The notes under the pieces are model-generated. The model was given only the letters and a program-made list of their open reading frames with translations. It was not told the DNA's origin and did no database searches. A stretch of 64,000 bases of DNA from Chrysemys picta bellii (Eukaryota). Positions 1,867-64,000 of the stretch are shown piece by piece. Numbering within the stretch: the stretch's first letter is position 1; every line of letters starts with the position of its first letter. The position numbers and the translations under genes were made by a program. Location of the stretch: contig NC_088796.1 in the NCBI RefSeq assembly GCF_011386835.1, positions 101,804,001 through 101,868,000 on the forward strand, in the 5' to 3' direction.

Positions 1867-2170
1867 CCAAGAGGGCTTCACCATCTTTAGCAAAATCCTC
1901 ATGCAAACTGCCTGGGATGGGAGTTCCCTTGTCAGGTGACAGTATGGACTTTATCTGCAAATTCAGTGGCTGGAGGCATGTTTGAGAGCACAGATGGAAA
2001 AGGAATTTACCACCCAGAAAATGAGGAGCACCAGTTCACCAGAGTGAAAAAGTACTTCCAGGGGATAGATGCATTCCTGAGGGGGAAAAAGCAATACAGC
2101 CTGTGAGTGTGAGTGTGTGATCATTCACATGGAAATACCCAGATGTTTTCTACTTATTGACAGACTCCGT
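1867..2170 (+). pseudogene. 5'-truncated B-type type I IFN pseudogene
   Basis: Translates in pieces as FTIFSKILMQTAWDGSSLVR / GLYLQIQWLEACLRAQMEK / RVKKYFQGIDAFL / QYSL / IHMEIPRCFLLID, colinear with the 38634 gene. It has frameshifts and no signal peptide or promoter. Confidence 0.9.
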
Positions 2171-7101: not shown

Positions 7102-7675
7102 ATGATCAGCAGGAGTTTGCTGCAATTTTGCCTCATGCTGCTCTTTTCCAGTGAAATCTCATGTCTGGACTGTAACAGGATTTATGTTCTACAAACCAGA
7201 ATGAACAGCGAGAGTTTAGAGCATCTGGAGAAAATGGGTGGAAACTTTCCCTTCCAATGTCTAAATGAAAGGACAGCTTTCAAGCCCAGAGATATCCTCA
7301 AGATCCGACTGTCCCAGCAAGAGAATGCCAAGGTAGCCATCCAACAGATCCTCCAAGAGCTCTTCCATATCTTTACCAACAATCTCACCCAAGCTGCCTG
7401 GAATGGGACTTCCATAAAGGAATTCCAAAATGGTCTTCACCAGCAGATTGAGAAGCTGGAGACGTGTTTGAGTGCTGAGAAGGGAAAGGAGATAACCTAC
7501 CCAGGAAATGAGAACCTCCTGCTCACCAGCCTCAAACTGAAGACATATTTCCAGACAATCGACGATTTCCTGAAAGAAAAGCAATACAGCCAGTGTGCCT
7601 GGGAGATCATCCGTGTAGAAATATCCAGATGTTTTCCAATTCTCAACATACTCACAAAAAGACTTCAAGATGAAG
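7102..7675 (+). CDS. Type I interferon A1 (IFN-kappa/beta-like), exon 1; 205 aa if spliced to exon 2
   Basis: Signal peptide then SC|LDCN, FPFQCLNE and FLKEKQYSQCAWEIIRVEISRCF type I IFN motifs; NLT and NGT sequons; donor GAAG|GTAC at 7675/7676. Confidence 0.95.
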
Positions 7676-8334
7676 GTACTATATATTGGTTTTTCCTAGA
7701 AAAACTCAAATATTATATGAATAAAACAGCTGAAGAGAGATAGGTCATAATTTTATAATTCTTATTATGTAGGGCCCAATCTTTCTACCATAGTAATTTT
7801 ACCCATACACCTATTTCAAACTCATGTTAATAAAACTGTTTTAGAGTAGCATATATAGTTTAGTGCTTCCTTACCACACACATATTCTGTATGGAAAATA
7901 TACAAATATATCGTAACTGATTACAAATGAAAAAATATCATCCGTTGATAATTAACCATACCAAATATAACTTTGCCCAGTAAGCATCTTAGTAGGGGAA
8001 AAGTTGGCTTGTTGCTGTTTTTAACAACTGCCTAGTAAGAGAAAATTCCAGTCAGGACACCAGAAAATTGATGGTCTGTGCTCACACACTTCTATCCCAC
8101 CATCTAATTCTGCCGGTTACTTCTGCACACAGGGATGGCCAAGACTACTTATTCTGCTTTCCTTCATTCTGTTTATCTCTACATTTCAACAATTTTGGTT
8201 AAAAAAAAATTGTCACAAGATTATAAGTGCAATAAGGCTCAGGATTTATGATTTGACATCTGGTTAGAAAAAGATGGCCTATATTTGGCATTTGAAACTC
8301 TCCATGTTTAAACCATTCCCCTTTTTCATTTCAG
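7676..8334 (+). other. Intron of A1 (659 bp)
   Basis: GT donor and polypyrimidine acceptor TTCCCCTTTTTCATTTCAG, both conserved in paralogs. Confidence 0.8.
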
Positions 8335-8378
8335 CACGTGATGCTTCATGTAATGATGTTATGAAAACAGCTGAATGA
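8335..8378 (+). CDS. A1 exon 2 coding part (tail ARDASCNDVMKTAE*)
   Basis: In frame with the phase-1 donor; TGA at 8376-8378; same-length frame in all four A copies. Confidence 0.7.
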
Positions 8379-8629
8379 AACTACACCTCCACTGGAGTGG
8401 TTCGTCTCTAAGTTGATTCTACAAGCAGTTCCTTTCCAGATTCTTATCAGCCTGTCTTGCATTAAACAAGGGACCAACTCCTACAGAACTCCAATTGCTC
8501 AATTTATATACTACTTGCCATTACCAGATTGATTTACTCACATGAGAAAATGTAAAACAAAAGATATTGCTGAAAATATGCCAGAAGACAATGTAGTATT
8601 TGAACCGAAGAAGAAAAACCTTATGATTT

Positions 8630-9030
8630 CCAAATCATTGATGTTACCCATTTGCTCAGAATTTGCTTTTGGCTGCTCTTAAAAATGAAATCTCACCTCT
8701 GAACTGTAACTGTTATGCTCATTTCAGCATAACAGATGTGAACCAGGTCAACTTCCAAACAAAATAGAAGGATAATTTTCCTCTAAAGTCAGAAAGAAGA
8801 GAGACTTTGTGGCCCCAAAAGGTTCTCAAGTCTTGGCAGAAAGTGACTGCCAAGTGGCCATCCAGGAAATCCTCGAACAGATTTGGTACATCAAGTGTCA
8901 AATTCCTTCTTAATCTCCTTGGAATGATAGCCCCATTAAAGATCCAAACATGGACTCATAAGCAAGTGGAGCTTCTGGAGCCCTGTTTTGCTTCAAGCAT
9001 AAAAAGCAAACAAGAGCATCCCAAATTCTA
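8630..9030 (+). pseudogene. Ghost IFN relic G2
   Basis: Nucleotide homology to exon 1 from the signal peptide (GCTGCTCTT...GAAATCTCA...CTGAACTGTAAC) through VAIQEILEQ and ELLEPCF; multiple stops and indels. Confidence 0.8.
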
Positions 9031-9059
9031 GATCATGTATAATTAAGTGCACTGGAATT

Positions 9060-9260
9060 ATAAACTATTGCTACTATATATTCTCCTCCTGCACTGTGAA
9101 AATATTTCAGATAATTTTACTGGATTTGTAACAGTATTGTGGTGTTGATCTACTTTTATTTATTGATAATATTTATGTATTGCTCTTATTTATCATTTTC
9201 AGATGTGTTTATAATATTTATAAATAAATATTTATTTATACAAAATAGCAGCCTACTGCA
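9060..9260 (+). promoter_or_regulatory. AU-rich element cluster and poly(A) signal
   Basis: Multiple ATTTA/TATTTAT motifs; AATAAA at 9223-9228. Equivalent blocks follow every ghost. Confidence 0.65.
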
Positions 9261-19372: not shown

Positions 19373-19946
19373 ATGATCAGCAGGAGTTTGCTGCAATTTT
19401 GCCTCATGCTGCTCTTCTCCAGTGAAATCTCATGTCTGGACTGTAACAGGATTTATGTTCTACAAACCAGAATGAACAGCGAGAGTTTGGAGCATCTGGA
19501 GAAAATGGGTGGAAACTTTCCCTTCCAATGTCTAAATGAAAGGACAGCTTTCAAGCCCAGAGATATCCTCAAGATCCGACTGTCCCAGCAAGAGAATGCC
19601 AAGGTAGCCATCCAGCAGATCCTCCAAGAGCTCTTCCATATCTTTACCAACAATCTCACCCAAGCTGCCTGGAATGGGACTTCCATAAAGGAATTCCAAA
19701 ATGGTCTTCACCAGCAGATTGAGAAGCTGGAGACGTGTTTGAGTGCTGAGAAGGGAAAGGAGATAACCTACCCAGGAAATGAAAACTTCCTGCTCACCAG
19801 CCTCAAACTGAAGAGATATTTCCAGACAATCGACGATTTCCTGAAAGAAAAGCAATACAGCAAGTGTGCCTGGGAGATCATCCGTGTAGAAATATCCAGA
19901 TGTTTTCCAATTCTCAACATACTCACAAAAAGACTTCAAGATGAAG
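19373..19946 (+). CDS. Type I interferon A2, exon 1; 205 aa if spliced
   Basis: As A1 with 3 substitutions (L>F, T>R, Q>K); donor GAAG|GTAC at 19946/19947. Confidence 0.95.
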
Positions 19947-20605
19947 GTACCATATATTGGTTTTTCCTAGAAAAACTCAAATATTATATGAATAAAACAG
20001 CTGAAGAGAGATAGGTCATAATTTTATAATTCTTATTATGTAGGGCCCAATCTTTCTACCATAGTAATTTTACCCATACACCTATTTCAAACTCATGTTA
20101 ATAAAACTGTTTTAGAGTAGCATATATAGTTTAGTGCTTCCTTACCACACACATATTCTGTATGGAAAATATACAAATATATCGTAACTGATTACAAATG
20201 AAAAAATATCATCCGTTGATAATTAACCATACCAAATATAACTTTGCCCAGTAAGCATCTTAGTAGGGGAAAAGTTGGCTTGTTGCTGTTTTTAACAACT
20301 GCCTAGTAAGAGAAAATTCCAGTCAGGACACCAGAAAATTGATGGTCTGTGCTCACACACTTCTATCCCACCATCTAATTCTGCCGGTTACTTCTGCACA
20401 CAGGGATGGCCAAGACTACTTATTCTGCTTTCCTTCATTCTGTTTACCTCTACATTTCAACAATTTTGGTTAAAAAAAAATTGTCACAAGATTATAAGTG
20501 CAATAAGGCTCAGGATTTATGATTTGACATCTGGTTAGAAAAAGATGGCCTATATTTGGCATTTGAAACTCTCCATGTTTAAACCATTCCCCTTTTTCAT
20601 TTCAG

Positions 20606-20649
20606 CACGTGATGCTTCATGTAATGATGTTATGAAAACAGCTGAATGA
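20606..20649 (+). CDS. A2 exon 2 coding part (ARDASCNDVMKTAE*)
   Basis: Acceptor TTCATTTCAG ends at 20605; identical to A1 exon 2. Confidence 0.7.
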
Positions 20650-31806: not shown

Positions 31807-32379
31807 ATGATCAGCAGGAGTTTGCTGCAATTTTGCCTCATGCTGCTCTTCTCCAGTGAAATCTCATGTCTGGACTGTAACAGGATTTATGTTCTACAAA
31901 CCAGAATGAACAGTGAGAGTTTAGAGCATCTGGAGAAAATGGGTGGAAACTTTCCCTTCCAATGTCTAAATGAAAGGACAGCTTTCAAGACCAGAGATAT
32001 CCTCAAGATCCGACTGTCCCAGCAAGAGAATGCAAAGGTAGCCATCCAGCAGATCCTCCAAGAGCTCTTCCATATCTTTACCAACAATCTCACCCAAGCT
32101 GCCTGGAATGGAACTTCCATAAAGGAATTCCAAAATGGTCTTCACCAGCAGATTGAGAAGCTGGAGAGGTGTTTGAGTGCTGAGAAGGGAAAGGAGATAA
32201 CCTACCCAGGAAATGAGAACCTCCTGCTCACCAGCCTCAAACTGAAGAGATATTTCCAGACAATCGACGATTTCCTGAAAGAAAAGCAATACAGTCAGTG
32301 TGCCTGGGAGATCATCCGTGTGGAAATATCCAGATGTTTCCTCATGCTCAACATACTCACAAAGAGACTTGAAAATTAA
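31807..32379 (+). CDS. Type I interferon A3 (190 aa)
   Basis: Complete ORF with IFN motifs ending KRLEN-TAA, followed directly by G|GTAC donor. Confidence 0.95.
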   Translation: MISRSLLQFCLMLLFSSEISCLDCNRIYVLQTRMNSESLEHLEKMGGNFPFQCLNERTAFKTRDILKIRLSQQENAKVAIQQILQELFHIFTNNLTQAAWNGTSIKEFQNGLHQQIEKLERCLSAEKGKEITYPGNENLLLTSLKLKRYFQTIDDFLKEKQYSQCAWEIIRVEISRCFLMLNILTKRLEN

Positions 32380-32380
32380 G

Positions 32381-33034
32381 GTACCATATTTGTATTTTTC
32401 CTCAGGAAACTAAATCATATTAGTTCAATAAAACAGCAGAAGAGAGATGGGGATAATTTTAAAACTCGTATTATATAGGGCCCAACACTTCTCCCATAGT
32501 AATTTCAGCTATTTCAAATTCATGTTAATAAAACCGTTTTAGAGTAGCATATAATTTAGTGCTTTCATTCTACACACACAATATTCTGTATGAAAAACAT
32601 AGAAATACATCATAACTGCTAACTAATGACAAAATATCATGAGTGATAACTAACCAAAATGAATATAACTTTGCCCAGTAAGTGTCTTAGTTGGGGAAGA
32701 GAAAAGCAAAAACATCCCTTCAACAACTGCCTAGTAAGACAACATTCGAGTCAGGACACCAGAAAACTGGGGGTCAGTGACCACATTCTTCTATCCCACC
32801 ATTGAATTCTGACAGTGACTTCCGCTCATAAGGACGGCCAAGGGTACTTATTCTGCTTTTCTTTGTGCTGTTTACCACTAAGTTAAGCTGCTTTAGTGGG
32901 AAAAAAAAGGTTGTAACAGGGTGATAAGTTCACAAAGGCTCAGGATTTATCATTTGATATCAGCTTAGAAAAACATACACTATATTTGAAATTTGACACG
33001 CTGTGTGTTTCAACCATTCCCTTTTTCATTCCAG
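32381..33034 (+). other. 3'-UTR intron of A3 (654 bp)
   Basis: Donor 1 nt after the stop; acceptor TTCCCTTTTTCATTCCAG. Confidence 0.8.
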
Positions 33035-33349
33035 CACGTGATGCTTCAAGTAATGATATTATGAAAACTACTGACTGATACTGCACCTCCACTGGAGTCC
33101 TTCGTCTCTAGTTGATTCTACAAGCAGTAGACTTTCGAGACTACCTTTCGAGACTCCTGTTAGTTCATCTTGCATTAACCCCGGGACTAACTCTACTACA
33201 AAAGTCTAAATGCGCATTTTACTTACTTCTTGATATTGCTGGATTGATTCACTCACATGAGAAAGTGGAAAACAGAAGATATTGCTCCAAACAAGCCAGA
33301 GTATTTGATAAGAAGGGGAAAATCTTCATGATTTCTTAATCATCATTGA

Positions 33350-38633: not shown

Positions 38634-39209
38634 ATGACCACCAGGTGTTTGCTGCATGTTTGCCTTGTACTGCTCTTCTGCACTGAAATCTCATCTCGAC
38701 TCTGTACCATGCTTCACTTCCAGCAGAACAAAGTGAACAAAGAAAGCTTGGAGCTTCTGCAGAAAATGAGCGGAAATTTCCCCTCAAAATGCATAAATGA
38801 AAGGGCAGCTTTCAAGCCCACCCAGAATGTTGTTGAACTTTCAGTGTCCCAGAAGGAGAATGCCAAGGTGGCAATTCTAGAGATCCTCCAAGAGATCTTC
38901 AACATCTTTAGCAAAAACCTCACCCAAAGTGCCTGGGATGGGACTTCCATAGTCAGGTTCCAAAGTGGACTTTACCAGCAAATTCAGCGGCTGGAGACAT
39001 GTTTGAGAACACAGATGGAGAAGGAATTAACCAACCCAGAAAGTGAGGAACTCCAGCTCACCAGTCGAAGAGTGAAAAAATACTTTCAGGAGATAGATGC
39101 TTTCCTGAAAGAAAAACAATACAGCCTTTGTGCCTGGGAGATTATTCGTGTGGAAATACCCAGATGTTTTGTACTTATTGACAAACTCACTAGAAGGCTT
39201 AGTAACTAA
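38634..39209 (+). CDS. Type I interferon B (191 aa)
   Basis: Signal peptide, FPSKCINE and FLKEKQYSLCAWEIIRVEIPRCF; TAA followed by G|GTAC donor. Confidence 0.95.
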   Translation: MTTRCLLHVCLVLLFCTEISSRLCTMLHFQQNKVNKESLELLQKMSGNFPSKCINERAAFKPTQNVVELSVSQKENAKVAILEILQEIFNIFSKNLTQSAWDGTSIVRFQSGLYQQIQRLETCLRTQMEKELTNPESEELQLTSRRVKKYFQEIDAFLKEKQYSLCAWEIIRVEIPRCFVLIDKLTRRLSN

Positions 39210-39210
39210 G

Positions 39211-39841
39211 GTACAGTACAAATCTTTTCCTTGGAGTAAAAGAATTAATATTAGTATGAATCATACAGCTGAACAGAGATAGCGGATATTTTATAACTCT
39301 GCTTATATCGGGCCTGATCATCTTCTACAGGATCAGTGGCCAAATAGCAACTGATTTCCATGGCAGCAGCTTCCGGCTCTTCCCATCCTCTGGAAATGGA
39401 TTTGCAATTACATGGATTTCTTTTTCTGTGTTTCTACTTTTATTTAGGTTTGTGATTCTTCATAATCTCCCACATATCAGGTGCTGTTATGCACTACTTA
39501 ATTGGCAGTCCATGCAACAAAGTACATATATTTCGAATCCTTAGCCACCTCACCAGTATTTTGGTCATCAAATAATGATACTTCCCCTCCACCCGCAAGG
39601 TACTCTGACTTCTACATATGTAGTGTGTTTCTATTATGGTCATGGTTGCTATTTATTAATCTGTCCTCATCATATACCACAGCTTGCAAAGTTTCCTAGG
39701 GACATTTATAAAATATATTAACTGAGCATAAGACTTGTGAGATTATGAGTAGAAAGTTATTTTCATTTAATGTATTGAGATTAATACAATGGAAAATTAA
39801 TTTTTCCCTTTGTGTTTCAACCAAATTTCATTTCATTCCAG
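39211..39841 (+). other. 3'-UTR intron of gene B (631 bp)
   Basis: Donor after the stop; acceptor TTTCATTTCATTCCAG; the following exon is homologous to A exon 2. Confidence 0.75.
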
Positions 39842-40144
39842 GTGAGGATGCAGCGACTACAGAGGTTAAAACAGTTGGATGAAATTGTACCATGTAGTGG
39901 ATTCCCTCCTCTCTACTGATTCTTCCCACAGTGACTTCTAAGACTCCATAATGCTTGATCTTCTATTATGCAATACGCTCACTTCATAATGAAATTCCAA
40001 CTGCCCATATTACAATTTATGTGATAATACTCTGTTGATTTACTCAAAGTTTAAATTGCAAAATGAAGGATATCGATGCAAAAAAATTACAAGAAAATTA
40101 AAGGGTTAGACCTTAAACATTGTTGACATTATGGGTTTGCTATA

Positions 40145-40650: not shown

Positions 40651-41817
40651 CCAACATTTTTAGAAGTACTAACCGAAATCAAGTAATATTTTATACATGA
40701 TTTAAAATGAGATGTTTGGAATTTTAAAAGCTGTTGTTACTATTTATTCTATCTGTGCACTATGAAAATATTTTCAGATCATTTTATGATATTTGTAACA
40801 GGATATTTATGTCAGTCTATTATTTATTTATTGTTCCTATTTATGTATTTATCATAGACATTTGTTACTTATTAATAAATAATTATTTTATATAAAATGG
40901 CAACCTATAGTAGTAATGATTTGAATTAAATACCTATTGTACCAAAAAGGAGAATAAAAAAAGAAAACCCTGTAATTGTACAACCTTAAAACCCCAATTC
41001 CAGAGATTACTTTTGCACGTGACTAACTTAAAGTATGTGAGCCATCCCACTGATGTTAGTGCTTCCAGTTAGGAACATGTTTAAATACATTGATGAATCA
41101 GTGTCCCAGTTCGCAGTAATTCCATATTAAAAATAATTGTTACAGAATGATAATTAGCCTTTCCATCCAAACAGACCACACCTGAATACCTGAACTTTGC
41201 CACCTTTTACTATTCTATTTTTTACCAGGTTATTTCCCCCTCAAAAAAACTTGTCAATTTGGATGTTTGGTGTAGTAGACGGTTGTGTTGGAAGAGGCTA
41301 GATTGGTGCTCTTTCCCTCAGTAAGCAAGATAGCATGCACCCCTTAACACACACCAATTGTTAGTTTGTAATTAGCCTGCCCATACCTCATCAATTATCT
41401 GCATTCACATAACCTCTCCCCCAACCAAAATCAAGTCAGGTTTGTAAGTATCCAGCACCTACCCACAATACATTTACTAGCACTGCCCCCAATATTAAGT
41501 CTGTGCTCTCATGCACTCTTATCAGGTTAGTGGCCCACTGCTTGATCTCATTACCTCTGTGTGCGCCCAGGCTAAATTCATTCTTGGGTGTACACCACAA
41601 ACAAAATTACATGTGAAAAATAACAGCAGGAATAGGCCATTTTGTATTAGGACTATCAAAGTTTCTCATTGTCACCTCTAAAACGCAGCTCCCCATTTGG
41701 TGGAATACGTCAGTCAGAAACTACCCAGGAAGAATACGGAATTCTTCTGAAAAAGTCTAACAACCCCAAACCTATTCAGCTCTGGGGGGAAATTATTCCC
41801 CTTCATTCCATCACACC

Positions 41818-42409
41818 CAGAGCCGGCTCCAGGCACCAGCCGAGCAAGCTCATGCTTGGAGCGGCAGATTCTAAGGGGCAGCATTCCGGCCGGCCTTTTT
41901 CTTTTTCTTTTTCTTTTTGGTTTGCCGCTCCGGCCACACTGTAGGGGGTGGCAGTGCAGAGGAGGGGTGCACCCTGCAGCAAACTCAGCAGGGCAGCCCG
42001 CATCCTTCCCTCCCAGCCGACCGGAGAGGCGCAGAGCCCTCCCAGCAGGCAGCACAGTGGGAGGGGCCGTGTGGCGAGCGCCCCGCTGAAGCCCTGGCTG
42101 CCCCCCTTCTCTCCGTCCCCCCTGCTAGACCGGGCGCGCACTCCGCTGCACGTCTGCAGAACAGGGAGTCCCCTGCGCCCTGGCTCCAGCTGCCCTGCAG
42201 GTTGTTGGGGTTTTTTTTGCATTGCTTTGCCGCTCCAGCCGCCCTGCAGGTGGTTTTTTCTTTTTGGTGTGTGTGCGTGTTTGTGTGTGCTTCGCCGCTC
42301 TAGCCGCCCTGCGGGATTTTTTTGTTTGTTTTTTCTCCCCTGCTTCACCACTCCGGCCCCCCCACAGTTTTTTTTGCTTGGAGCGGCAAAAAAGCCAGAG
42401 CTGGCCCTG
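41818..42409. mobile_element. hAT-type MITE (592 bp)
   Basis: TIRs CAGAGCCGGCTC/GAGCTGGCCCTG; perfect 8-bp TSD ATCACACC; empty site near 14970. Confidence 0.85.
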
Positions 42410-42429
42410 ATCACACCTTTAATAAAAAA

Positions 42430-42845
42430 GGGGGAATGCTGAACGCAGTGTTCAGTTGAGCTCTTTGACAATATCACCCGTATCATAAGGAGCAGCCATG
42501 CCTTTGAGGAATCCCAGCTCACACTTCTTAAAAGTGAGGAAAAAATTGTAAATATCTCCCTCAGAGATTCTCCCACAGCCTTCCACTCATGGGCAGGAAG
42601 GAGGGGCGGGTTGTCCGTAGAGTTCCTCATGGAAGTGGCTGTCGTTCCATCTCCAGACTCAGCAGATTCTGTGGTTTCTGCACTGATCAAAAAGGTCTCT
42701 CCAGACACAGAGATCCGCAACATCTGTCTCAGCTCTGGTCCCATTAGATTCCCTGCCCCAGTCTTTTCAAGTAGTATTTTTCAGGGCTGTTCCAGGCTGC
42801 ATGCAGTTGCCTTAGACAACATTTTAAAGAGTCATTTTGGGGCAG
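42430..42845 (-). pseudogene. Antisense IFN-like relic R3 (best preserved)
   Basis: LREIFTIFSSLLRSVSWDSS (42564-42505) matches LQEIFTIFSKNLTQTAWDRS of the 53112 copy at 12/20 positions, ungapped. Confidence 0.65.
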
Positions 42846-46978: not shown

Positions 46979-47552
46979 ATGATCAGCAGGAGTTTGCTGC
47001 AATTTTGCCTCATGCTGCTCTTTTCCAGTGAAATCTCATGTCTGGACTGTAACAGGATTTATGTTCTACAAACCAGAATGAACAGTGAGAGTTTAGAGCA
47101 TCTGGAGAAAATGGGTGGAAACTTTCCCTTTCAATGTCTAAATGAAAGGACAGCTTTCAAGCCCAGAGATATCCTCAAGATCCGACTGTCCCAGCAAGAG
47201 AATGCCAAGGTAGCCATCCAACAGATCCTCCAAGAGCTCTTCCATATCTTTAACAACAATCTCACCCAAGCTGCCTGGAATGGGACTTCCATAAAGGAAT
47301 TCCAAAATGGTCTTCACCAGCAGATTGAGAAGCTGGGGACGTGTTTGAGTGCTGAGAAAGGAAAGGAGATAACCTACCCAGGAAATGAGAACCTCCTGCT
47401 CACCAGCCTCAAACTGAAGAGATACTTCCAAATAATAGACGATTTCCTGAAAGAAAAGAAATACAGCCAGTGTGCCTGGGAGATTATCCGTGCAGAAATA
47501 TCCAGATGTTTTCTAATTCTTGATGTACTGACAGATCGGCTTAAAAATGAAG
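46979..47552 (+). CDS. Type I interferon A4, exon 1; 205 aa if spliced
   Basis: IFN motifs; donor GAAG|GTAC at 47552/47553. Confidence 0.93.
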
Positions 47553-48144
47553 GTACCATATTTGCATTTTTCTAGGGAAACTAAATCGTATTGTTTCAAT
47601 AAAACAACTGAAGAGAGATGGATGGTAGTTTTATAACTTGTATTACGTAGGTCCCAATCTTTCTTCCATAGTAATTTCAGCTATTTCAAACACATGTTAA
47701 TAAAACTGTTTTAGAGTAGCATATAGTTTAGTGCTTTCATACCACACACGCAATATTCCATGTGAAAAACATAGAAATACATCATAACTGCTAACTAAAA
47801 AAGAACAGCGAGATGCCTCCCTCCAACAACTGCCTAATAAAACAACATTCCAGTCACGACCACCAGAAAACGGAGGGTCTGTGTCCACACACTTCAATCC
47901 CTCCATCGAATTCTGCCAGTTAACACTGCACATAGGATGGTCAAGGGTACTTATTCTGTTTTGGTTTTTTTTGTTCGGTTTACCCCTACATTTCAAGAGT
48001 TTTAGTAAAAGAAAATTGTCACAAGATCATAAGTGCATTAAGGCTCAAGGTTTATGATTTGACATCTGGTTAGAAAAACAGGAACTATATTTGACATTTG
48101 AAACTGTGTATGTATGTTTGAATCATTCTCCTTTTTTATTCCAG

Positions 48145-48188
48145 CATGTGATACTTCAGGTAATGATATTATGAAAACTGCTGAGTGA
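48145..48188 (+). CDS. A4 exon 2 coding part (ACDTSGNDIMKTAE*)
   Basis: Acceptor CTCCTTTTTTATTCCAG ends at 48144; same-length frame as A1. Confidence 0.7.
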
Positions 48189-62964: not shown

Positions 62965-63531
62965 ATGACCACCCGGAGTTTTCTGCACATTTGCCTTGTC
63001 CTGCTCTTCACTGAAAACTCATCTGTGGACTGTAACATGCTTCACTTCCAGCAAAACAAAGTGAACCAAGCTAGTTTACAGCTTCTGGAAAAAATGGGAG
63101 GACAATTTCCTGTGCAATGTCTAAATGAAAATTCAAACTTCATATCCCTCCAGAATGTTCTCAGCTCCAGAGAGTTCCAGAAGGAGAATGCCATGGTGGC
63201 AATCCAGGAGATCCTCCAACAGATCTTCAATATCTTCAGCAAAAGTCACATCCAAACTGCCTGGGATAGGAGTTCCATAGTTGCATTCCAAAATGGACTT
63301 CACCAGCAAATTGAGCTGCTGAAGACATGGTTCGATGGAGAAAAAAAGATGGAGACAACCTACCCACAAAATGAGGACTTCACCAGGCTGAAAGTGAAGA
63401 AATATTTCCATGTGGTAGACAATTTCCTGAAAGAAAAGCAATACAGCCTGTGTGCCTGGGAGATCATCCGTGAGGAAATGAGAAGATGTTTTCTGATTAT
63501 GGACCAACTCACAAAAAGGCTTAAAAATTAA
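62965..63531 (+). CDS. Type I interferon C (188 aa)
   Basis: Signal peptide, VDCN, FPVQCLNE and FLKEKQYSLCAWEIIREEMRRCF; TAA followed by G|GTAT donor; acceptor probably beyond the window end. Confidence 0.95.
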   Translation: MTTRSFLHICLVLLFTENSSVDCNMLHFQQNKVNQASLQLLEKMGGQFPVQCLNENSNFISLQNVLSSREFQKENAMVAIQEILQQIFNIFSKSHIQTAWDRSSIVAFQNGLHQQIELLKTWFDGEKKMETTYPQNEDFTRLKVKKYFHVVDNFLKEKQYSLCAWEIIREEMRRCFLIMDQLTKRLKN

Positions 63532-64000
63532 GGTATTTTACAAAACACTTTTTTTAGAGTAATTGAAATAATAGTTTTGGGGAAAAACAGGTAAAACGTG
63601 CTGTGCTTTCATTTAAAAACTATTCTATAGGTTCTGTTGTATCCTTTATTAGAGAATATCCTGTTTATATTGCTGATATACAAAAGTGATATATGCACCT
63701 CATATAATATATCCAGGGATATGACATTGTTCAATAGATTGATGAAATGGACAGGGGAATAAAAACTGGCCTGCTCTAAACAAATACCAATCAAGATAAC
63801 ATTCCACTCATAACACCTGAAAATCCATCCCTTTTTATCCCATGCTATCTTTAGATCTAGGTCTTCTGCAGGGGAAGACAGGCAGGATTCCCTATCTGCT
63901 TTCACTGGCTCTATTCACCTATAAAGTTTAACAGTTTTAGTAAAACCTTTTGTAAAAAGAGTTTCTTTGTTAGGCTTACTGGAAGACAACTTAGGACTTA

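What the first reader, a model, noticed from the sequence alone, without database searches (positions are those of the whole stretch)
7660..8378. One-base TAA/GAA switch at a post-stop intron turns a 3'-UTR exon into a coding tail
Seen: all six intact genes have NAAG|GT at the end of exon 1. In A3, B and C it is TAAG|GT (stop then donor; 32377, 39207, 63529). In A1, A2 and A4 it is GAAG|GT (7675, 19946, 47552), and the conserved acceptor ~590-660 bp downstream gives an in-frame 14-aa tail (ARDASCNDVMKTAE or ACDTSGNDIMKTAE). The same-length frame (ARDASSNDIMKTTD) also persists in A3, where it is not translated. Established: human IFNK has an intron right after its stop codon, whereas most amniote type I IFNs are intronless. 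Inference: a multi-copy kappa-architecture family with long and short isoform genes set by one nucleotide; the direction of change is unknown.
Basis: partly seen in the sequence, partly recalled or inferred. Interest (0 to 1): 0.85.

Follow-up and report, generated by a model that had tools for sequence, protein, structure and literature searches.

The report
Stop-or-sense switch at turtle interferon intron
In a turtle interferon gene cluster every gene has an intron right at its last codon, and one base there (TAA or GAA) decides whether the protein stops or, if the intron is spliced, gains 14 residues; the intron is a known kind, the switch is a modest new twist, and splicing was not shown here.

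Summary
The window comes from a turtle, most likely Chrysemys picta. It holds six intact type I interferon genes (Pfam PF00143, E about 1e-50), and each ends NAA G|GTA. A3, B and C have TAA. A1, A2 and A4 have GAA and an in-frame 14-codon tail behind a conserved acceptor.

Across 21 turtle genes from 8 species the junction is invariant: 12 TAA, 8 GAA, 1 CAA. Exon 2 and its TGA are also conserved in alligator, where a shifted donor and a 10-nt deletion keep the frame.

The architecture is not new. Chicken IFN-kappa and human IFNK have an intron immediately after the stop (PMC5457445). RefSeq already lists 205-aa tailed models in at least 10 turtle species.

Possibly new points:
- The explicit one-base toggle.
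- Its repeated flipping, with at least 8 state changes on a protein tree.
- In the A clade the sense state looks ancestral.

Splicing in this genome was not shown. The one read-laying run gave no 7675/8335 joint, and this genome's own annotation calls A1, A2 and A4 as unspliced read-through proteins. Selection on the tail is only suggestive: no indels, but substitution rates like non-coding sequence, and TAA genes keep the frame open too.

Interest is moderate to low.

The parts
7102..7675 (+). A1 exon 1: 191 codons plus the first base (G) of the split codon. The toggle codon GAA is at 7672-7674.
7676..8334 (+). A1 terminal intron, phase 1, GT..AG, 659 nt. It holds a conserved AATAAA at 7720-7725, and the read-through frame stops at TAG 7741-7743.
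8335..8378 (+). A1 exon 2 coding part: tail ARDASCNDVMKTAE plus TGA. The exon continues as 3'UTR.
19373..19946 (+). A2 exon 1 (GAA at 19943-19945). Intron 19947-20605.
20606..20649 (+). A2 exon 2 tail, identical to that of A1.
31807..32380 (+). A3 exon 1 with TAA at 32377-32379, then G|GT. Intron 32381-33034.
33035..33078 (+). A3 exon 2 start. The untranslated 14-codon frame ARDASSNDIMKTTD is still open to the same TGA.
46979..47552 (+). A4 exon 1 (GAA at 47549-47551). Intron 47553-48144 (592 nt).
48145..48188 (+). A4 exon 2 tail ACDTSGNDIMKTAE plus TGA.
38634..39210 (+). B exon 1 with TAA at 39207-39209, then G|GT. Intron 39211-39841.
39842..39882 (+). B exon 2 start. The open 13-codon frame GEDAATTEVKTVG ends at the homologous TGA and carries a 3-nt in-frame deletion relative to the A type.
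62965..63532 (+). C exon 1 with TAA at 63529-63531, then G|GTAT. Its exon 2 lies beyond the window end.

Best explanation
The window is part of the multi-copy type I interferon cluster of a turtle, inferred to be the HACD4 locus (locus a).

Every gene carries an old phase-1 terminal intron whose donor sits one base after the last codon of the helical domain (NAA G|GTA). The first base of that codon is outside the splice consensus, so it can change without touching splicing.

- With T, the codon is a stop. The protein is 188-191 aa and the intron lies in the 3'UTR. The stop is 1 nt from the exon junction, so it is immune to nonsense-mediated decay.
- With G, the codon is Glu. After splicing, the reading frame runs 14 codons into exon 2 to a conserved TGA and gives a 205-aa interferon.

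The tail is most likely a flexible C-terminal extension of the last helix. It could modulate receptor binding or stability.

Shown here: the sequence anatomy, its conservation and the gene models in other species. Inferred: that A1, A2 and A4 are spliced in vivo and that the tail matters.
For: - Junctions and frames were verified.
- All 21 turtle genes sampled in 8 species keep NAA G|GTA[CT]: 12 TAA, 8 GAA, 1 CAA. Gharial has TAA G|GTATA. The Anolis IFN-kappa-like gene has AAA G|GTATGG and an annotated CDS that crosses the intron.
- The acceptor and the ...ATGAAAACAGCTGAATGA stretch are conserved in A, B and other paralog types and in alligator. There the donor is phase 2 and exon 2 is 10 nt shorter, so the frame still ends at the same TGA with tail STSTNVMKTSE.
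- The 44-nt tail has no indel in 8 A-type genes, against 2.9 expected from its flanks (P about 0.05). The unspliced read-through frame instead varies from 7 to 27 codons.
- RefSeq has 205-aa tailed models in many turtles. Chrysemys XP_005294852 changed from a 185-aa read-through model (version 1) to a 205-aa spliced model (version 2).
- Chicken IFN-kappa cDNA shows the same post-stop intron, as in human (PMC5457445). PMC13176653 notes that some amniote type I IFNs carry introns, citing the Pelodiscus study.
- AlphaFold2 of the 205-aa Malaclemys protein, which has the identical tail, gives mean pLDDT 81.5. Residues 191-205 come out as a low-confidence (67 falling to 55) extension of the last helix.
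Against: - No spliced RNA was seen. The only read-laying run (four runs whose RNA nature is guessed) gave no 7675->8335 joint. One contig crosses the acceptor unspliced (8279-8473).
- This genome's own annotation calls A1 and A2 as 213 aa and A4 as 198 aa, which are unspliced read-through products.
- A conserved AATAAA lies 44-47 nt inside the intron of most A-type genes. Unspliced, early-polyadenylated mRNA is therefore plausible.
- Variable columns make up 48% of the tail, like intron and UTR (43-54%) and unlike exon 1 (25%).
- TAA genes keep the exon-2 frame open as well as GAA genes do, including B-type genes that look to have been TAA since before the pleurodire-cryptodire split. The conservation may therefore be at the RNA or DNA level rather than the protein level.
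- The Carettochelys GAA gene has a shifted acceptor and a 6-residue tail, read by eye from the alignment. The script line for this gene used a wrong offset.
Confidence: 0.62

Rival explanations
1. The genes are effectively single-exon in this species. Transcripts are not spliced and are cleaved after the intronic AATAAA (7720-7725 in A1). GAA copies then make read-through proteins of 213 aa (A1, A2) or 198 aa (A4), as this genome's annotation has it, and exon 2 is not part of the mRNA.
For: - The own-genome models are 213, 213 and 198 aa.
- An AATAAA or ATTAAA is conserved 44-47 nt after the donor in Chrysemys A1-A4, Chelonia, Mauremys and Emydura.
- No spliced contig was seen, and one contig is unspliced at the acceptor.
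Against: - The read-through frame is not conserved in length (7 to 27 codons). Of 7 distinct indels in the first 70 nt of the intron, 5 are not multiples of three.
- GT, the pyrimidine tract and AG are kept for more than 200 My while the intron interior decays.
- Homologous genes of chicken are spliced in cDNA. For Pelodiscus I recall the same from memory only.
- Annotation pipelines default to single-exon ORFs when a silent gene has no RNA-seq.
Confidence: 0.2
2. The intron is spliced, but the 14-residue tail is functionally neutral. Exon 2 is conserved for a non-coding reason such as splice enhancers, mRNA stability or a DNA element. The TAA/GAA state then drifts, helped by gene conversion between tandem copies.
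For: - The tail's substitution variability equals that of intron and UTR.
- TAA genes of the A and B types keep the same open frame and the same conserved ...AAAACAGYTGRATGA core.
- Conservation runs on past the TGA.
- At least 8 state changes occur on the protein tree.
- Paralogs cluster by species, a sign of concerted evolution.
Against: - The tail has no indels in A-type genes (P about 0.05).
- The only length change in the B type is 3 nt.
- Alligator shows compensating frame changes.
- Emydura, a distant sense gene, keeps 12 of 14 residues. Pelodiscus is closer but has TAA, and keeps 8 of 14.
- All of this rests on small numbers.
Confidence: 0.3
3. The GAA copies are decaying genes that lost their stop codon.
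For: A loss of stop is a common first lesion. A frameshifted IFN pseudogene lies in the same window at 53121-53686.
Against: - A1, A2 and A4 have intact 191-codon ORFs with a full PF00143 match (E about 1e-50).
- The sense state is the majority in sea turtles, Mauremys and Emys, in many copies.
- The alligator sister gene shares the sense state.
Confidence: 0.04

Closest known systems
Human IFNK and chicken 'IFN-kappa' gene structure (Santhakumar et al. 2017, PMC5457445)
   Same: Both are type I interferon genes with one intron whose donor follows the stop codon directly, so the second exon is 3'UTR. That is the same position as in A3, B and C.
   Different: Those are single-copy genes with a stop codon. 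Here the architecture sits in a multi-copy array, and in some copies the stop is a sense codon so that exon 2 becomes coding. True IFNK orthology (MOB3B locus) is not implied.
Pelodiscus sinensis IFN1-IFN7 (Chen et al. 2022, Dev Comp Immunol 134:104461; not held, cited in PMC13176653)
   Same: These are turtle locus-a interferons. PMC13176653 cites this study for introns regained in amniote type I IFNs. From memory of the abstract, IFN1-5 have two exons and one intron. The Pelodiscus IFN1 protein (P0022) is 81% identical to A1.
   Different: The nine Pelodiscus proteins of the cluster sampled here all end as short forms. The two genes read at the DNA level have TAA at the junction. The coding-tail state therefore would not have been seen there. 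I could not read the paper to check.
RefSeq 'interferon beta-like' 205-aa models in turtles (for example XP_053888185.1 Malaclemys, XP_037759034.1 Chelonia, XP_005294852.2 Chrysemys)
   Same: They have the same exon 1, intron and 14-residue tail. The Malaclemys tail is identical to that of A1 and A2.
   Different: They are automatic models without published analysis. For A1, A2 and A4 themselves the annotation gives unspliced 213- and 198-aa products.
C-terminal length variants of type I interferons (perciform fish IFNh with about 20 extra C-terminal residues, PMC5332411; from memory, IFN-omega/tau extensions and the IFN-alpha tail effect on IFNAR2 binding)
   Same: The helical core is unchanged, and paralogs differ in a short, probably flexible C-terminal tail.
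   Different: In those cases the tail is encoded contiguously. Here it is supplied by a separate exon and switched by one base at the junction.

Membership tests
Type I interferon (Pfam PF00143, Interferon alpha/beta domain) | Full-length match to the family profile above the curated cut-off | tested here: met
   five genes were scanned (A1, A3, B, A4, C). E-values run from 2e-52 to 9e-49, at 166-178 bits against a cut-off of 26.8, covering profile positions 1-5 to 160 of 160. A2 was not scanned. It is 98% identical to A1.
Type I interferon (Pfam PF00143, Interferon alpha/beta domain) | Signal peptide, conserved cysteines and a helical-bundle fold | tested here: met
   C53 and C165 are invariant, and C24, C122 and C177 nearly so; the AlphaFold2 model is all-helical, with mean pLDDT 81.5 and pTM 0.79. 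No structure search was run.
IFN-kappa orthologs (MOB3B-C9orf72 locus) | Single-copy gene at the MOB3B locus | tested here: not met
   The window holds six intact copies plus relics in 64 kb. PMC13176653 reports that the MOB3B locus holds one gene or none in all amniotes, and that the HACD4 locus holds many genes in reptiles (median 9). The window contains no flanking marker gene, so the locus assignment is an inference.
Post-stop (3'UTR) intron architecture of IFNK type | GT donor directly after the last codon and a downstream AG acceptor, conserved across species | tested here: met
   the junction holds in 21 of 21 turtle genes, a gharial gene and the Anolis IFN-kappa-like gene. In alligator the donor is shifted by an indel. 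Of 19 turtle genes whose downstream sequence could be read, 17 keep the acceptor AG. In Emydura y it reads AA and in Carettochelys A it is shifted.
Post-stop (3'UTR) intron architecture of IFNK type | Intron removed in mature mRNA | tested here: inconclusive
   no joint at 7675/8335. The contigs are fragmentary and chimeric between paralogs, and the RNA nature of the runs is only guessed. Splicing is documented by cDNA for chicken.
Long-isoform (tailed) interferon gene | Sense codon at the junction plus an in-frame exon 2 ending at the conserved TGA | tested here: met
   A1, A2 and A4 meet it. So do Chelonia, two Mauremys genes and Emydura (CAA). Carettochelys is the exception.
Long-isoform (tailed) interferon gene | Tail present in the secreted protein and under selection | tested here: inconclusive
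   no indels (P about 0.05), but non-coding-like substitution variability. The protein itself cannot be tested with these tools.

The most novel reading that the evidence does not exclude
The terminal intron and a translated C-terminal mini-exon are ancestral features of the so-called intronless amniote type I interferons. They share their position with lizard, chicken and human IFNK and are kept in frame in turtles and alligator. The codon abutting the donor acts as an evolvable one-base switch. It has flipped between stop and sense many times, giving each species a mix of tailed and tailless interferons with different receptor or stability properties.
Probability: 0.25. Interest if true: 0.55.

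Novelty: new variant of a known kind. Interest (0 to 1): 0.35.

Why it matters
- It shows how an intron placed exactly at the stop codon makes the C-terminus of a protein evolvable. One substitution outside the splice consensus adds or removes a 14-residue tail without risking nonsense-mediated decay.
- It bears on the view that amniote type I interferons are intronless. The terminal intron is shared, by position, by turtle, crocodilian, lizard, chicken and human (IFNK) genes.
- In practice, the 213- and 198-aa products annotated for A1, A2 and A4 in this genome are probably wrong.
- Anyone expressing recombinant turtle interferon should consider both the 190-aa and the 205-aa forms.
- The gain is incremental, because both the architecture and the tailed gene models already exist in public data.

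Tried and rejected
1. RNA evidence
- Two run searches found only runs whose RNA nature is guessed.
- The single read-laying run showed exon 1 and the exon 2/3'UTR region covered, and the intron almost empty in three of four runs. It showed no 7675->8335 joint.
- The joints it did list (7179->8772, 7416->7566, 7571->8723) are non-canonical. They match other paralogous or ghost sequences, so I did not read them as splicing.
- A high-depth B-like contig in X2 runs 255 letters past 7635, but only 30 of those letters are shown, so its splice state could not be read.

2. A Logan contig encoding a 203-aa read-through form (L001) includes promoter sequence. It is genomic DNA, not a transcript.

3. Exon 2 as the relic promoter of the trailing interferon 'ghost'. 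I found no homology to the A1, B or C promoters (score 11 against a shuffle mean of 11.2). The idea is rejected as unsupported.

4. The intron as a decayed tandem copy of exon 1. The result was not significant (165 against 143 +/- 23).

5. An echo AAAACAGCTGAA occurs about 50 nt into the intron and again in exon 2. It is weak in A1 (8 of 500 shuffles reach the score), stronger in Pelodiscus (1 of 300) and absent in several genes. I only note it.

6. An alternative upstream donor in B (CTTA|GTAACT) would skip the stop in frame. It is absent from the Emydura and Carettochelys B-type genes, so I dropped it.

7. Counts of synonymous and non-synonymous changes in the tail were made by eye. They came to about 11:7 in sense genes and 13:3 in TAA A-type genes. 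The direction is as expected but far from significant.

8. Chen et al. 2022 could not be read. Literature searches for a statement on tailed turtle interferons found none.

Full report
**What is there.**
The window carries six intact open reading frames on the + strand, starting at 7102, 19373, 31807, 38634, 46979 and 62965. The five that were scanned (all but A2) match the Pfam interferon alpha/beta domain over its full length, with E from 2e-52 to 9e-49. A2 is 98% identical to A1. The closest database proteins are turtle 'interferon beta-like' entries. The entries masked as the window's own lie on a 133,555,881-bp record shared with Chrysemys picta bellii entries. The window is therefore from a painted turtle or a very close relative.

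A1, A2, A3 and A4 are 94-98% identical to each other at the protein level. The first three are spaced about 12.3-12.4 kb apart and A4 follows 15.2 kb after A3. B and C are older paralogs, 55-59% identical to A1.

Every gene ends NAA G|GTA.
- A1, A2 and A4 have GAA. A conserved pyrimidine-rich acceptor lies 659, 659 and 592 nt downstream. Splicing there joins the leftover G to 14 codons and a TGA.
- The resulting tails are ARDASCNDVMKTAE (A1, A2) and ACDTSGNDIMKTAE (A4).
- A3, B and C have TAA at the same codon.
- A3 keeps an open, same-length frame in exon 2 (ARDASSNDIMKTTD).
- B also has the acceptor, at 39842, and an open 13-codon frame that ends at the homologous TGA.
- All coordinates given in the finding are correct.

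**Is it more than paralog inheritance?**
I fetched homologous loci from Chelonia, Mauremys, Pelodiscus, Carettochelys, Emydura, Gopherus, Emys, alligator, gharial and Anolis.
- All 21 turtle genes keep NAA G|GTA[CT]: 12 TAA, 8 GAA and 1 CAA. A gharial gene has TAA G|GTATA.
- The acceptor and the stretch ...ATGAAAACAGCTGAATGA are recognisable in A-type and B-type genes of both turtle suborders and in alligator. Intron interiors drop to 38-80% identity.
- In alligator an indel has moved the donor to phase 2 (CTC AG|GTAC) and exon 2 is 10 nt shorter. Together these keep the frame open to the same TGA, with tail STSTNVMKTSE.
- In the Anolis 'interferon kappa-like' gene the junction is AAA G|GTATGG. 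The annotated CDS crosses a 0.8-kb intron to pick up one residue and a stop.

**What is already known.**
- Santhakumar et al. 2017 report an intron in the 3'UTR of chicken IFN-kappa. 'Similar to the human homologue', its second exon comes immediately after the stop codon (PMC5457445).
- PMC13176653 states that some amniote type I interferons have regained introns, citing the Pelodiscus study of Chen et al. 2022. I could not read that study. From memory, its abstract says IFN1-5 have two exons and one intron.
- The same review places multi-copy reptile interferons at the HACD4 locus and single-copy IFNK at MOB3B. The window's array is therefore a locus-a cluster with a kappa-like architecture, not a set of IFNK orthologs. 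This is an inference, because no flanking marker gene lies in the window.
- RefSeq already holds 205-aa models with exactly this tail for Malaclemys, Emys, Trachemys, Mauremys, Gopherus, Chelonoidis, Chelonia, Natator, Caretta and Eretmochelys, and for one other Chrysemys gene. That gene's model changed from a 185-aa read-through version to a 205-aa spliced version.
- For A1, A2 and A4 themselves, the genome's annotation gives unspliced read-through products of 213, 213 and 198 aa.

**Is the intron spliced here?**
This was not shown. The two run searches returned only runs whose RNA nature is guessed. The single read-laying run gave the following.
- Contigs lie over exon 1 and over 8315-9120.
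- There is almost nothing over 7709-8213 in three of four runs. That pattern is what RNA would give.
- There is no 7675->8335 joint, and one contig crosses the acceptor unspliced.
- Contigs also lie over the promoter, and several are chimeras between paralogs.

I count this as inconclusive.

The case for splicing rests on three things: conservation of both splice sites for more than 200 My, cDNA evidence in chicken, and the gene models in other turtles. Two Mauremys RefSeq models even join the A4-type donor to a different downstream exon, whose counterpart lies at 54261-54362 in this window. This hints that the donor is used, but it is not proof.

**The rival, unspliced mRNA.**
Most A-type genes carry a conserved AATAAA 44-47 nt into the intron, at 7720-7725 in A1. 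An unspliced transcript ending there would give the annotated read-through proteins.

Against a selected role for those products, the read-through frame varies from 7 to 27 codons between genes, and most indels there are not multiples of three. Both kinds of mRNA may exist. In GAA genes they would encode different C-termini.

**Is the tail selected?**
The evidence is only suggestive.

For:
- The 44-nt coding part has no indel in eight A-type genes, where the flanks predict 2.9 (P about 0.05).
- The B-type length difference is exactly 3 nt.
- Alligator shows compensating changes.
- The distant Emydura sense gene keeps 12 of 14 residues, while the closer Pelodiscus TAA genes keep 8 of 14.

Against:
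- Variable columns make up 48% of the tail, like intron and UTR and twice the share in exon 1.
- TAA genes keep the frame open just as well. This includes B-type genes of Chrysemys, Gopherus and Emydura.
- Conservation continues past the TGA.

Conservation of exon 2 for a non-coding reason, helped by gene conversion between tandem copies, explains much of this.

**Direction of change.**
- On a DNA tree of exon 1 the A clade is sister to the alligator gene (support 95/95). It contains GAA in Chrysemys, Chelonia, Mauremys and Carettochelys, CAA in Emydura, and TAA in Pelodiscus and Chrysemys A3.
- On a 121-protein tree the stop/sense state needs at least 8 changes. Two of these involve chimeric or partial models.
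- Stops within the A clade appear in Pelusios, Pelodiscus, Gopherus and emydids.
- Within the A clade, sense to stop therefore seems the usual direction, at least three times.
- The B and C clades are uniformly TAA, so the state at the common root stays open.
- Many nodes are unresolved and paralogs cluster by species. These counts are rough.

**Mechanism proposed.**
- The switch base is position -4 of the donor, outside the splice consensus, so both states should splice alike.
- A TAA 1 nt before the junction is too close to trigger nonsense-mediated decay. This follows from the established 50-55-nt rule.
- With GAA the stop lies in the last exon.
- AlphaFold2 of the Malaclemys 205-aa protein, which has a tail identical to A1's, gives a confident helical bundle. 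Residues 191-205 form a low-confidence continuation of the last helix. This fits a flexible tail.
- By analogy with C-terminal variants of other interferons (fish IFNh, PMC5332411; IFN-alpha tails, from memory), the tail could tune receptor binding or stability. This step is inference.

**Verdict.**
The architecture is a known kind, and the tailed form is already present in automatic annotations of other turtles. The explicit one-base stop/sense toggle, its repeated flipping and the deep conservation of the mini-exon frame are, as far as I could find, not described. Splicing and function in this genome remain to be shown. I rate it of moderate to low interest.

Noticed in passing
window 8651-8711 (and the equivalent stretches after A2, A3, A4 and B): Downstream of exon 2 lies a decayed interferon copy. 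Positions 8651-8711 align to the signal-peptide region 7116-7177 of A1, and tblastn finds a relic at 48606-48935 after A4. The next poly(A) signal shared by most genes is about 2.1-2.2 kb after the ATG, so the last exon may run through this 'ghost'.
   Followed up: partly
window 53121-53686 and 54261-54362: This is a B-like interferon pseudogene with a frameshift and a deleted stop/junction region (...CTACAG|GTACAG). Its exon-2 counterpart at 54261-54362 encodes, in another frame, DATTLDLLKQLNQTALWNGIPPPLPPPTVTSETP. That peptide is 100% identical to the C-terminus of a Mauremys reevesii RefSeq model (P0092), which joins an A4-type exon 1 to it.
   Followed up: partly
window 7720-7725, 19991-19996, 32427-32432, 47598-47603: An AATAAA is conserved 44-47 nt inside the terminal intron of A-type genes. 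It is also present in Chelonia and Mauremys, and Emydura has ATTAAA. It is absent in Pelodiscus, Carettochelys, B-type genes and alligator. It could drive intronic polyadenylation in competition with splicing.
   Followed up: partly
window 7711-7733 versus 8353-8375: A short echo: ATTATATGAATAAAACAGCTGAA in the intron against ATGATGTTATGAAAACAGCTGAA in exon 2. As a result the read-through frame ends ...MNKTAEER and the spliced tail ends ...MKTAE. It is weakly significant in A1 (8 of 500 shuffles) and Pelodiscus (1 of 300), and not in other genes. It may be a trace of how the mini-exon arose.
   Followed up: partly
window 8347-8356, 33047-33056, 48157-48166: Exon 2 holds a GTAAT 15-16 nt after the acceptor, and in A4 it reads CAG|GTAATG, a good donor. 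A Mauremys mutica RefSeq model (P0075, 231 aa) uses the equivalent site. It makes a 16-nt micro-exon (ARDTS) that is then spliced to a farther exon.
   Followed up: no
window 1868-2167 and 41803-42744 (- strand): Further interferon-like relics. One is a weak tblastn match (35% identity) at 1868-2167. The other is a long antisense ORF region that another first-stage note (s1-318502) describes as an IFN-like relic.
   Followed up: no
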